Shown here: one piece after another, positions 20,013 through 23,000 of the stretch
Layout of the letters: the number at the start of each line of letters is the position of its first letter
Position numbering within the stretch: the stretch's first letter is position 1
Source of the DNA: Ylistrum balloti
Taxonomy: Eukaryota
Assembly (NCBI RefSeq): GCF_031769215.1
Contig: NW_026781956.1
Coordinates: forward strand, 1,240,001-1,304,000
Length of the DNA: 64,000 nt
Direction of reading: 5' to 3'
Made by a program: the position numbers and the translations under genes
Notes under the pieces: generated by a model
Seen by the model: the letters and a program-made list of their open reading frames with translations, nothing else
Told to the model about the DNA's origin: nothing
The model's database searches: none

Positions 20013-23000
20013 CTAAACAACAAGCAAGATGTATTTGGACAAACTGTACTAAATGAATTTAAAAAATATTTCCAAGTGATATTTGTAACTTAACCCCATC
20101 AGTTCTATAAGCTGCCTAATGTACTCTTAAAAAAAAGTTTGTGGTTTTCTTTTTAGCAAATTTCACGATCCAAACCTATATTGTAAGTTAAACTTTGTTA
20201 ACTTATATAACATGACTATTCATCTTACATGCAATTTATTCTAAATCTACATGTCTAATTCATACTGCTATGGAAAGGTTCATACATACATCTGTTGGTA
20301 ATTTAGTATTATAGATGACTTACTCCCTAGAGTGTTTGATTCTAACAGACACTTATAAATGGGGTCTGAGTTTGGCAACTCTCTGGTGTTATCCACACAA
20401 ATATAGCACTGTCAAAATGATCTGCTGACAACCACTTACCTGCATAGGCCATAAAGGCAGATGACAGGAGGACATCACCAATGATGGTAGCCATCTGACT
20501 CTTAAAGGTCTCACTTCCTGCCTCCCAGCGGTGTTTCTCATTCCCAAGACTGTTGAGTAAGGCCACACTCCTTTCCACCTACAACAGTATAACACAAATC
20601 TGTTTCATTTGATATAAAGTTATTTATTACAAGCAAAGTGAATCAGAGTAAAGACTTTCTGATGTCACAAATATGGAGGAAACATTTTGACCTACTGACT
20701 CTCCCTCTATATAGGTCATGAACTAGTGACCTTGTTTTATGGATTTTGGACAAAGGACATTGACCTACTGACCTTGGCCTGCACAGAAGAGAGGGAAGAC
20801 TTGATGGCCTGGGCCTGAGAGATGAGAACAGCATATTCTTCCTTGTACTTGGCAATGCTACGTTCCAGCTCACTGATCAGTTTGTTGACCTCGTCGCCCT
20901 TCAGACGATTCTCCTCCGCCTGATTCTCCAGTCCCTTTAACTCATTTCTCAGAGGTTCCACCTTCTTTAGGATATCTGCATAGTTCAGCTGTAACATCAC
21001 ACAACGAGGCAGAATTACAGAGTTGTACATCAGGCGCCGGTGAAGGTTGGAAAAAATATGCCACGTTCAGATAAACATCTTACTATTAAACACGGTAAGC
21101 TTATAATTTTCCACCTGCAATGGTAAACTCATACTACTGGTTAACATAAAATAGGTTAATTAATTTACAGTAAAAAAATTCAATGTGACAAGCTTAAAAA
21201 AATGTAATTAACCTGTGCAATTGCCCACTTCACCATAGGACCACAGGCCAAGCTAGCACGGTTCACTTTCTCATAATTGTATTCTGGATTAGCCATATAC
21301 TTGGTCTTCATCTTGTGACGGATGTCATCTCTGTAAAAATCATTATCAAATATTCTATATGCAATTATTTTACATTGTTTTCAACTTCTTCTACAAACAA
21401 TAGCTAATATCCTTTTCTGTATGATGATGAGATTGAGGTGTATGATAAATTCTTAAATTACATTTTTACATTGTTACCCATATCGTAAAAGACTTCAGAT
21501 GACTTTAATCCTGTGCATGAAATCACCTGACAATGTATCTACCAATATGTTACAAACTAAAGATGGTGACATTCAGCACCTGGTAAAACGAAATGTTTTG
21601 TATCTTCAACTCAAATTGGTACATCAAGTATATTCTTTGTAATATGTATGAGTAATATTTACAAGAAACTAGAGGAACATCTCTTGCTATTTCAATCTCC
21701 TGATCCTGTTTCTTCTAAACAATCAAACAAATTGAACACACATATACATAACATCAGGGACAGTCCTCTTTAGTAAAGAGGCATCAGATTTGTTTTATCA
21801 GTTAAGGTCACCTTTCAGACAGACCTGTTGTCCAGTAACTAGTCACCTTTCAAACCTACCTGTTGTCCAGTGTCCCGACACCATTCAAACCTACTTGCTG
21901 TTCTGCGTACAGAAACCATTCTGACCTACCTGTTGTCCAGTGACTAGTCACCTTTCGTACCTACCTGTTGTCCAGTGTCCCGACACCATTCAAACCTACT
22001 TGCTGTCCTGTGTATAGAAACCGTTCTGACCTACCTGTTGTCCAGTGACTAGTCACCTTTCGTACCTACCTGTTGTCCAGTGTCCAAACACCATTCAAAC
22101 CTACTTTCTGTCCTGTGTATAGAAACCATTCTGACCTACCTGCTGTCCATTGTTCAGTAAAACATGATGACAAAGTCCTATTTAATAACAGCCCCTGAAC
22201 AAAACCTTTCATCAGACATTCCCGATGACAGGGGAGTTGCTTGACTTACCTGTCCCTTAGAAAAACCTGACATACTTACTTAATATCCTCAATGTGCATT
22301 TTGACAATGTTGGAAATGAAGTTGTCCTTGACAATTGCAGTTCGGATGGTTCGCCAGTCAGAGGCACTCTCCCCTATGAGGAGACAGATGGCCTCAAGGG
22401 CTAGCTTGACAGGGGGTGGGGGGTTGGACATGGTCCTGATCTCCACAAGGTCCTTCTTTTTTATTCCTTTCACAGCTTAGGTGGGAAGGCAAGGAGAGAG
22501 AAATATACAGGTCACACACCATTATACCCAAAGAATCCAGGTATATAGAAAAGCCCACTACACCTCGACATCAACTGCTTTACACAACTTTTCCTGACCA
22601 AATATCAATGAGGACCAAAAGGCTGTTTTAACATTGTAAAACAAGTTGATTAGGTATGGTGGGCCATTTCTACACACACAAGAAAATCTACCAACCCATA
22701 CACATCTGACTACACCTAGTACCGCCAGCTGTATTTTCTATAAACTCACGGAATAATTAGTGTGTTGAAGTTCACAATAGTAGAAATGAAATTTTCTCTC
22801 ATAATGATGCCTCTCAGCGACTTCCAGTCAAGATCCTGTTCTCCGAGCAGGGTACAGATGGACTCGATGGCCATTTTGACAGCATTAGGAGGATTAGGGA
22901 GGGACTTTACCTCCACAAGATGCTGTTTCTTGATAGATTTGACAGCTGAAGAAAGCAAAACACAATACAAAAACATAACAAAATGAACAAAATATATTGA

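What the first reader, a model, noticed from the sequence alone, without database searches (positions are those of the whole stretch)
22280..22945. Two intact, mutually exclusive exons encode alternative microtubule-binding domains of cytoplasmic dynein-1
Seen: two tandem exons of identical length (196 nt) and phase (1 to 2), both stop-free, either joining E59 to E61 in frame. Since 196 is not a multiple of 3, including both or neither shifts the frame, the classic mutually-exclusive signature. They share only 32/66 aa, so the duplication is old and both frames appear maintained. Known: this segment is the stalk-tip MTBD (helices H1-H5), whose basic H1 and H3 residues contact tubulin. Differences fall there: KKQH vs KKKD, PPNA vs PPPP, WKSLRG vs WRTIRT, MREN vs VKDN. 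60B has weaker splice sites (AAG acceptor, TAA|GT donor) and looks like the regulated form. Inference: one gene makes two dynein-1 motors with swappable microtubule 'feet' of different affinity, processivity or tubulin-code preference; the human gene has a single exon here as far as I know. I recall predicted mutually exclusive exons in some lophotrochozoan dynein-1 genes, so the cluster may not be wholly new; I cannot check this.
Basis: partly seen in the sequence, partly recalled or inferred. Interest (0 to 1): 0.85.

Follow-up and report, generated by a model that had tools for sequence, protein, structure and literature searches.

The report
Alternative microtubule-binding exons in scallop dynein-1
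A scallop's cytoplasmic dynein-1 gene carries two intact, interchangeable exons for the core of the motor's microtubule-binding "foot"; the pair is old, shared with flatworms and kept by selection, but which tissues use the second exon is still unknown.

Summary
On the minus strand, 22945-22750 (60A) and 22475-22280 (60B) are two 196-nt exons. Both have AG/GT sites, the same phase, and are open only in the dynein frame. They share 32/66 residues. Using both or neither gives an early stop.

60B is not a relic. Against Mizuhopecten yessoensis it shows 19 synonymous and 1 non-synonymous change (dN/dS 0.01). 60A shows 9 and 5 (0.14).

The same A-then-B pair, always 196 nt, occurs in seven separate invertebrate lineages and in a monogenean flatworm gene model. 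A cestode-like contig keeps only the B type. B-type exons form one clade, so the duplication predates the mollusc-flatworm split. A teleost has a separate duplication of the same exon.

A (U)GCAUG motif lies 42-84 nt upstream of exon A in all seven lineages, including two fetched after I made the prediction. This suggests Rbfox-type repression of A, which would switch splicing to B.

One spliced contig from a relative joins E59-A-E61 and skips B. I found no spliced B-form mollusc transcript.

Prior art: Pillmann et al. 2011 reported a mutually exclusive exon in Schistosoma DHC1, without naming the domain. Verdict: real, a new member of a known kind. Functional difference and tissue use are inferred.

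The parts
26572..26726 (-). It encodes ..[20 protein letters not shown] plus the first base of the split Ala codon. The 5' boundary is good to about 3 nt.
   Evidence: The boundaries are taken by analogy with the spliced contig L021 aligned to L006.
23002..23006 (-). GCAUG (context AAGCAUGCU) 61 nt upstream of exon 60A. Candidate Rbfox/Fox-1 binding site.
   Evidence: The motif sits at the same position in M. yessoensis. A (U)GCAUG lies 42-84 nt upstream of exon A in all seven lineages examined.
22946..23015 (-). About 70 nt of intron directly upstream of 60A. It is nearly identical between the two scallops and includes the polypyrimidine tract and the GCAUG.
   Evidence: Alignment A6. The middle of the A-B intron aligns poorly by comparison.
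22750..22945 (-). Exon 60A, 196 nt, phase 1 to 2. A-type (canonical-like) microtubule-binding core: end of CC1, H1-H4, start of H5.
   Evidence: It is 61/64 aa identical to M. yessoensis, with dN/dS 0.14.
22476..22749 (-). Intron between 60A and 60B, 274 nt, GT-AG, U2-type.
22476..22520 (-). About 45 nt of intron directly upstream of 60B, conserved between the two scallops. It is pyrimidine-rich and ends in an AAG acceptor.
22280..22475 (-). Exon 60B, 196 nt, phase 1 to 2. B-type core carrying the diagnostic KKKD in H1.
   Evidence: It is 63/64 aa identical to M. yessoensis at 172/192 nt, with dN/dS 0.01.
22244..22251 (-). A second perfect donor-like AG|GTAAGT, 30 nt downstream of the 60B donor, conserved in both scallops. 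Using it would give a stop codon at once.
   Evidence: Its function was not tested.
21213..21330 (-). It contains helix H6 and is shared by both forms.

Best explanation
The window holds the 3' part of a scallop (Pectinidae) cytoplasmic dynein-1 heavy-chain gene.

Two tandem 196-nt exons are used one at a time. Each encodes residues equivalent to human 3296-3359: the end of stalk helix CC1, and helices H1-H4 and the start of H5 of the microtubule-binding domain. Helix H6 and the rest of the motor are shared. Because 196 is not a multiple of three, mRNAs with both or neither exon carry an early stop and should be removed by nonsense-mediated decay. Only A-only and B-only mRNAs can make protein.

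Exon A is the descendant of the ordinary animal exon. Exon B is an old, diverged copy that arose before molluscs and flatworms split, and it has been kept under strong purifying selection.

Inferred: the choice is made by trans-acting splicing factors. A (U)GCAUG site just upstream of exon A lets Rbfox/Fox-1 proteins repress A in the cells that express them (typically nerve and muscle), so the downstream exon B is used there. This is the same geometry as C. elegans egl-15 exons 5B/5A.

Also inferred: the two forms differ in how the motor holds the microtubule. The fixed differences sit next to the H1 lysines that face beta-tubulin and in the H1-H2 and H2-H3 loops.
For: Shown:
- Anatomy, frame and stop consequences.
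- Only two copies in the window.
- The exon maps to DYNC1H1 3297-3359 in solved structures.
- Window versus M. yessoensis contig L009. For B: 19 synonymous, 1 non-synonymous, neutral-model P = 7e-12. For A: 9 and 5, P = 9e-4.
- The same A-then-B pair, 196 nt each with AG/GT, in L006/L008, L010, L002, L011, L019 and L020/L018.
- The Protopolystoma gene model P0165 contains an A-type followed by a B-type exon.
- The cestode-like contig L016 has only the B type between E59 and E61, so B alone can serve a dynein-1.
- Tree: B types including flatworms form one group (UFboot 81, SH-aLRT 92), split from A types by a branch at 91/91.
- Spliced contig L021 joins E58-E59-A-E61-E62-E63 and skips B.
- (U)GCAUG lies 42-84 nt upstream of A in 7/7 lineages. 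Joint chance is about 6e-9. For the two loci fetched after the prediction, chance is 0.005.
- Intron flanks of both exons are near-identical between the two scallops.

From the literature:
- Upstream (U)GCAUG represses an exon, and in egl-15 it represses the upstream exon of a mutually exclusive pair (PMC2777236).
- H1 is the one helix that moves on binding, and K3299 lies next to beta-tubulin D427 (PMC6629372).
- Charge changes in the domain shift run length and speed (PMC4987762).
Against: - No spliced mollusc transcript containing exon B was found. Three protein searches (two of them limited to about 100-420 residues and to the best 120 hits) and one exact junction scan of JGI metagenomes were blank. 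Use of B in scallops therefore rests on selection, not on reads.
- The only properly spliced B forms are flatworm gene models (P0083, P0271), which may be predictions.
- L021 has a 1-nt frameshift in exon A. It could be a retrocopy rather than cDNA, although either would derive from a spliced A-form mRNA.
- The GCAUG idea was formed after looking at the data. Only two lineages count as a prior test.
- Binding by Rbfox and tissue specificity are untested.
- All known basic contact positions stay basic in both forms. Net charge is +2 for both in this species. A large affinity difference is not evident from sequence.
- The taxa of most comparison contigs are unknown, because they are metagenome and Logan contigs.
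Confidence: 0.8

Rival explanations
1. Exon 60B is an unused relic of an old exon duplication. It is never spliced into mRNA, and only 60A makes dynein.
For: No spliced B-form mollusc transcript was found. The one spliced contig from a relative uses A. The scallop acceptor is AAG.
Against: There are 19 synonymous against 1 non-synonymous change between two scallops. The open frame, exact length and splice sites are kept in seven lineages whose synonymous sites are saturated. A cestode-like genome has only the B type.
Confidence: 0.02
2. 60B is a 'poison' exon. It is included together with 60A to shift the frame and send the mRNA to decay, as a way of setting dynein level, and it is not translated.
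For: A+B gives a stop 27 codons into B. A conserved decoy donor lies downstream of B.
Against: A poison exon is not under selection for an amino-acid sequence. Yet B has dN/dS 0.01 in the dynein frame, and it keeps every structural residue of the domain. Flatworm models and the cestode-like contig use B as the only such exon.
Confidence: 0.03
3. Both exons are used one at a time, but the two proteins behave alike. The pair persists because expression was partitioned between tissues or stages, not because the microtubule interface differs.
For: Basic contact positions are conserved in both forms, and net charge is equal in this species. A cestode-like lineage manages with B alone and most animals with an A-like exon alone.
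Against: Type-specific residues are fixed across all lineages sampled: Q-H against K-D beside the H1 lysines, L against M at mouse 3308, and acidic against A/S/V at 3330. In most lineages B is 1-3 charges more positive than A, and charge is reported to scale with run length (PMC4987762).
Confidence: 0.13
4. Mutual exclusion is enforced by competing RNA structures (docking and selector sites, as in insect Dscam), by a too-short intron, or by U2/U12 incompatibility, and not by frame plus trans-acting factors.
For: None found. These are the other known mechanisms for such exon pairs.
Against: The intron between the exons is 274 nt here and 247-586 nt in the invertebrate pairs (183 nt in the teleost L003), which is too long for steric block. 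All sites are GT-AG with U2-type donors. Intron-intron duplex energies do not differ from shuffles (z from -1.2 to +1.2) in either scallop, and inverted repeats are short and weak.
Confidence: 0.03

Closest known systems
Mutually exclusive exon in Schistosoma mansoni cytoplasmic dynein heavy chain (SmDHC1). Pillmann et al. 2011, PMC3228551; cited by Kollmar 2016, PMC5100056.
   Same: The same gene family. It is a pair of equal-length homologous exons with split codons at both ends, judged mutually exclusive from an alignment of more than 2000 dynein heavy chains. Flatworm sequences here carry both A-type and B-type exons at this position, so it is very probably the same cluster.
   Different: [quoted passage not shown] I could not confirm with Schistosoma sequence that it is this exon. 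The scallop case, the depth across lineages and the GCAUG element are not in that paper.
C. elegans egl-15 (FGFR) exons 5B/5A, regulated by ASD-1/FOX-1 through UGCAUG (review PMC2777236).
   Same: It is a two-exon mutually exclusive pair. A UGCAUG lies in the intron directly upstream of the first exon, and its binding represses that exon and selects the downstream one in muscle. Here a (U)GCAUG lies 42-84 nt upstream of the first exon (A) in every lineage.
   Different: It is a different gene, and binding and tissue pattern are not shown here. In egl-15 a neighbouring GUGUG site for SUP-12 is also needed. I did not test for a partner motif.
Mutually exclusive exon clusters in muscle myosin heavy chain genes of arthropods and other animals (PMC2257972, PMC3912159).
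   Same: One motor gene makes several motors by swapping homologous exons that encode parts of the motor domain touching the track or the nucleotide site. The exons are of the same length and phase.
   Different: Those involve myosin rather than dynein, many clusters per gene, and documented tissue-specific use and kinetic differences. None of that is yet shown for dynein-1.
Solved dynein-1 microtubule-binding domains (3ERR, 3J1T, 6RZB; full-length human chains such as 5NUG).
   Same: Both exon peptides align without gaps to residues 3297-3359 of human DYNC1H1, E about 1e-19. All hydrophobic core positions and the NPP motif are kept.
   Different: Exon B has K-D where the solved proteins have Q-H (mouse 3300/3301). 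Exon A has Leu-Pro for Met-Ala (3308/3309) and an extra acidic residue at 3330. Scallop exon A ends TLII where others have TEDI.

Membership tests
Mutually exclusive exon cluster (criteria of Pillmann/Hatje/Kollmar) | Neighbouring internal exons of about the same length | tested here: met
   Both are 196 nt, 274 nt apart, with no exon between them.
Mutually exclusive exon cluster (criteria of Pillmann/Hatje/Kollmar) | Same reading-frame phase and compatible splice sites | tested here: met
   Both run from phase 1 to phase 2 with AG acceptors and GT donors. Either joins E59 to E61 in frame.
Mutually exclusive exon cluster (criteria of Pillmann/Hatje/Kollmar) | [quoted passage not shown] | tested here: met
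   31/64 aa identical without gaps. Both align to the same residues of solved dynein domains.
Mutually exclusive exon cluster (criteria of Pillmann/Hatje/Kollmar) | Transcripts contain exactly one of the exons, never both or neither | tested here: inconclusive
   A-only splicing is seen in contig L021 from a related species. Both or neither gives early stops. No B-only mollusc transcript was found. No read data for this species are available in the tools.
Cytoplasmic dynein-1 heavy chain microtubule-binding domain | Sequence match to DYNC1H1 rather than dynein-2 or axonemal heavy chains | tested here: met
   The best solved matches are cytoplasmic dynein 1 heavy chain 1 (E 1e-19 to 1e-17), against axonemal chains at 1e-5 or worse. 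The M. yessoensis orthologue is named cytoplasmic dynein 1 heavy chain 1-like and carries PF12777.
Rbfox/Fox-1 regulated alternative exon | (U)GCAUG in the flanking intron close to the exon | tested here: met
   GCAUG is 61 nt upstream of 60A (23006-23002). None lies within 100 nt of 60B.
Rbfox/Fox-1 regulated alternative exon | The motif is conserved in position across species beyond neutral expectation | tested here: met
   It lies 42-84 nt upstream of exon A in 7/7 lineages. Two of these were fetched after the prediction (P = 0.005). Joint chance is about 6e-9.
Rbfox/Fox-1 regulated alternative exon | Splicing changes when Rbfox is present or absent, and the protein binds the site | not testable with these tools
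   This needs minigene, knock-down or CLIP experiments.
Structure-controlled mutually exclusive splicing (docking/selector) | Conserved complementary intron elements that pair one selector at a time | tested here: not met
   Duplex energies between the three introns are no better than shuffles in either scallop. Only short, weak inverted repeats are present. With two alignable species the test has limited power.
Steric or spliceosome-incompatibility mutually exclusive splicing | An intron too short to splice, or one U12-type and one U2-type intron | tested here: not met
   The intron is 274 nt, and the donors GTGAGT and GTAAGT are U2-type.

The most novel reading that the evidence does not exclude
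Spiralian animals (molluscs, flatworms and the unidentified lineages sampled) have for over half a billion years made a second cytoplasmic dynein-1. It has a different microtubule-binding core and is switched on by Rbfox-type repression of the ordinary exon in nerve and muscle. Ray-finned fish evolved the same solution independently by duplicating the same exon. Tuning the dynein-microtubule interface by splicing would then be a recurrent way to specialise the one cytoplasmic dynein, which is otherwise thought to be specialised only through adaptors and regulators.
Probability: 0.35. Interest if true: 0.8.

Novelty: new member of a known kind. Interest (0 to 1): 0.6.

Why it matters
Cytoplasmic dynein-1 is usually treated as a single motor whose many jobs are assigned by adaptors, dynactin and Lis1, not by variants of the heavy chain.

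A second, selectively maintained microtubule-binding core would add a level of specialisation at the track interface itself. The swapped segment includes H1, the one helix that moves when the motor grips the microtubule.

The pair gives a natural, matched set of two interfaces on an otherwise identical motor. This makes three things directly testable:
- how H1 and the H1-H2 and H2-H3 loops set affinity and run length;
- how they set preference for modified tubulin;
- whether such a difference matters in nerve or muscle.

If the separate duplication seen in a teleost is also present in zebrafish, the question could be addressed in a vertebrate model.

The finding also flags annotation errors. 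Public gene models either string both exons together (Protopolystoma, Coryphaenoides) or stop inside the cluster (Mizuhopecten).

Tried and rejected
- **Third copy.** A permissive tblastn of all exon types against the window found only the two.
- **Spliced B-form transcripts.** I searched with the 64-aa exon alone (10 hits, all single-exon genomic ORFs). I then searched with a mixed profile spanning E58-E61 and with a B-weighted profile. No mollusc B-form appeared among the best 120 hits of either. Hits beyond 120, and proteins outside the length windows, were not visible.
- **Full-length annotated isoforms.** These could not be searched, because no full-length animal dynein id was obtainable within the length rule.
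- **Exact back-translated E59-B junction in JGI metagenomes.** No match. The second scan, with the start of exon B, gave three more genomic loci and no cDNA.
- **RNA-structure control.** Inverted repeats and intron-intron duplex energies against shuffles gave no signal. A first, larger run timed out.
- **Profile alignments.** Two attempts (A3, A4) misplaced short exon rows and were discarded.
- **Cluster look-up for taxon names of fragments.** This gave no names, so most comparison contigs remain unidentified.
- **Literature.** Six searches found no paper describing alternative microtubule-binding exons in dynein-1 beyond the Schistosoma test case. The human mutually-exclusive-exon survey does not mention DYNC1H1 in its main text.
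- **Assembly artefact or haplotype duplicate.** Rejected, because the copies are only 58% identical in DNA and the pair recurs across species.
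Full report
**What is there.**

The gene lies on the minus strand and ends near 4976. 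The window covers about 59 kb of its 3' part.

Reading the reverse strand between 22990 and 22230 shows two exons:
- 60A is 22945-22750, with ...ttcttcag|CTGTCAAA at its start and ATTATTCC|gtgagt at its end.
- 60B is 22475-22280, with ...cacctaag|CTGTGAAA at its start and GATATTAA|gtaagt at its end.

Each is 196 nt, begins with the last two bases of an Ala codon and ends with two bases of a split codon. Each is open only in that frame.

The upstream exon ends ..[10 protein letters not shown] at 26572. The downstream exon is 21330-21213. Either exon joins the two in frame. Both together give a stop 27 codons into B, and neither gives a stop after seven codons. No third copy exists in the window.

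**Which protein part.**

Both peptides align without gaps to residues 3297-3359 of human cytoplasmic dynein-1 heavy chain in solved structures. Mouse numbering is two lower. The segment covers the end of stalk helix CC1, helices H1-H4 and the start of H5. Helix H6 lies in the shared next exon.

According to Lacey et al. 2019, H2, H3, H4 and H6 form a pre-formed interface. H1 is the one helix that moves on binding, with K3299 next to beta-tubulin D427 (PMC6629372).

**Whose genome.**

A GenBank contig of the scallop Mizuhopecten yessoensis (L009) carries the same two exons in the same order. Exon A is 61/64 aa identical and exon B 63/64. The window is therefore from another pectinid.

Scallop exon A ends ..NFNTLII (NFDTLAI in Mizuhopecten), where all other A-type exons end ..T(E/D)D(I/V). 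This is a lineage feature and not an assembly error.

**Is exon B alive?**

Between the two scallops:

| Exon | Synonymous | Non-synonymous | dN/dS | P under neutrality |
|---|---|---|---|---|
| B | 19 | 1 | 0.01 | 7e-12 |
| A | 9 | 5 | 0.14 | 9e-4 |

B is therefore under at least as strong protein-level constraint as A. This rules out a dead exon and a mere frame-shifting poison exon.

**How old and how wide.**

Searching 1.8 billion representative proteins with exon B returned many single-exon ORFs from eukaryotic DNA in genome, metagenome and Logan assemblies. A word-based search returned ten closer B-type exons.

Fetching their contigs showed the same layout each time: E59, then an A-type exon, then a B-type exon, then E61. 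Both exons are always 196 nt with AG/GT sites. The loci are L002, L006/L008, L010, L011, L019 and L020/L018. With the scallops this makes seven separate lineages. Synonymous sites between them are saturated, while A stays at 37-54/64 and B at 41-51/64 identical.

Other arrangements were also seen:
- The gene model of the monogenean flatworm Protopolystoma xenopodis strings an A-type and a B-type exon together.
- A cestode-like contig (L016) has only the B type between E59 and E61. Cestode and other flatworm models splice B to E61 (P0271, P0083). B alone can therefore serve as the domain of a working dynein-1.
- One contig (L004) has an A-type exon followed by a canonical-like copy instead.

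In a maximum-likelihood tree of 47 exon peptides, all B types including the flatworm ones form one group (UFboot 81, SH-aLRT 92). They are separated from all A types by a branch at 91/91. A types sit among the ordinary exons of other animals. With 64 columns the tree is weakly resolved. Even so, it fits a single duplication before molluscs and flatworms diverged, with A as the conservative copy and B as the derived one.

**Fixed differences.**

Positions where all A-type and all B-type exons have non-overlapping residues are as follows (mouse numbering):

| Position | A type | B type | Location |
|---|---|---|---|
| 3300/3301 | Q-H | K-D | directly after the H1 lysines K3298/K3299 |
| 3308 | L | M | H1-H2 loop |
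| 3309 | A, P or R | G, N or S | H1-H2 loop |
| 3330 | D, E or N | A, S or V | H2-H3 loop |

Basic residues at 3298, 3299, 3306, 3334, 3337 and 3342 stay basic in both forms.

B is 1-3 charges more positive than A in most lineages. In this scallop both are +2, because exon A lost two acidic residues at its end. Charge in this domain has been reported to scale with run length and speed (PMC4987762). A functional difference is thus plausible but not shown.

**How the choice may be made.**

- The intron between the exons is 274 nt and U2-type, so neither steric block nor spliceosome incompatibility applies.
- No intron-intron complementarity stands out.
- Frame, and hence mRNA decay, removes double or null products.
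- Between the two scallops, about 70 nt upstream of A and about 45 nt upstream of B are almost identical, while the rest of the intron barely aligns. This is typical of regulated exons.

Inside the block upstream of A is GCAUG (23006-23002). A (U)GCAUG then turned out to lie 42-84 nt upstream of exon A in every other lineage. I treated this as a prediction and fetched new loci by a DNA pattern for the start of exon B. Both new lineages have UGCAUGC, at -74 and -62. Chance for those two is 0.005, and for all seven about 6e-9. Only one locus has the motif within 100 nt upstream of B.

(U)GCAUG is the Fox-1/Rbfox site. Placed upstream, it represses an exon. In C. elegans egl-15 it represses the first exon of a mutually exclusive pair so that the downstream exon is used in muscle (PMC2777236). 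By analogy, Rbfox-expressing cells would use exon B. This step is inference.

**Transcript evidence.**

A 902-nt Logan contig (L021) comes from a relative of the L006 species. It joins E58-E59-A-E61-E62-E63 exactly at the exon borders and lacks B. It has a 1-nt frameshift in A, so it is either cDNA with an error or a retrocopy. Either way it reflects an A-only mRNA.

No B-containing spliced mollusc sequence was found.

**Comparison with what is known.**

Pillmann et al. 2011 used the Schistosoma mansoni cytoplasmic dynein heavy chain as a test case for predicting mutually exclusive exons. [quoted passage not shown] Kollmar 2016 mentions such splice forms in the motor domain (PMC5100056). Neither names the microtubule-binding domain or discusses age, selection, regulation or function.

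Further searches found nothing more. The scallop pair is therefore a new member of a known kind. The depth of conservation, the B-only cestode-like contig and the conserved GCAUG are, as far as this library shows, new observations.

**Verdict.**

The mutually exclusive reading is well supported by structure and selection (confidence about 0.8). The functional and tissue-specific parts remain to be tested.

I did not test it.

Noticed in passing
L003:1037-1232 and L003:1416-1611 (Coryphaenoides rupestris, GCA_002895965.2): A teleost dynein-1 gene also has two tandem 196-nt copies of this same exon. One is canonical and one is of a 'GEETSDWKKIRQV' type (45/64 aa, dS 0.66). The tree puts them apart from the invertebrate B type, so this looks like an independent duplication. 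Eight diverged fragment clusters of the second type exist (P0023, P0025, P0032, P0057, P0095, P0102, P0116, P0128). The GenBank model P0001 strings both exons together.
   Followed up: partly
L016:6047-6242: A cestode-like contig has only a B-type exon between E59 and E61. The A type appears to have been lost there.
   Followed up: partly
L004:612-807 and L004:1055-1250: One unidentified invertebrate contig has an A-type exon followed by a canonical-like second copy rather than a B type. The contig ends 290 nt later, so a third copy cannot be excluded.
   Followed up: no
window 22750-22765: Scallop exon 60A ends ..TLII (TLAI in Mizuhopecten), where every other A-type exon has ..T(E/D)D(I/V). 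Two acidic residues at the start of H5 were replaced by hydrophobic ones in this lineage.
   Followed up: partly
window 22244-22251: A perfect AG|GTAAGT donor-like site lies 30 nt downstream of the real 60B donor and is conserved in both scallops. Using it would add a stop at once. It may be a U1-binding enhancer or a decoy.
   Followed up: no
window 25849-25992: A single-copy 144-nt block in the E59-60A intron is 82% identical to the matching intron of M. yessoensis, although the rest of the intron does not align. Its meaning is unknown.
   Followed up: partly
window 21809-22149 and 24177-25089: There are tandem repeat arrays in the introns flanking the exon pair, with 105-nt units downstream of 60B and 52/112-nt units upstream of 60A.
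   Followed up: no
L009:117-3422 (M. yessoensis), P0165 (Protopolystoma): Public gene models mishandle the cluster. The Mizuhopecten model reads through the 60A donor to a stop. The Protopolystoma model joins an A-type and a B-type exon through non-homologous splice sites.
   Followed up: yes
L011:4852-4950; L020 downstream of exon B: In two lineages a GCAUG also lies 57 nt and 10 nt downstream of exon B. By the usual Rbfox rule, that position would enhance B.
   Followed up: no
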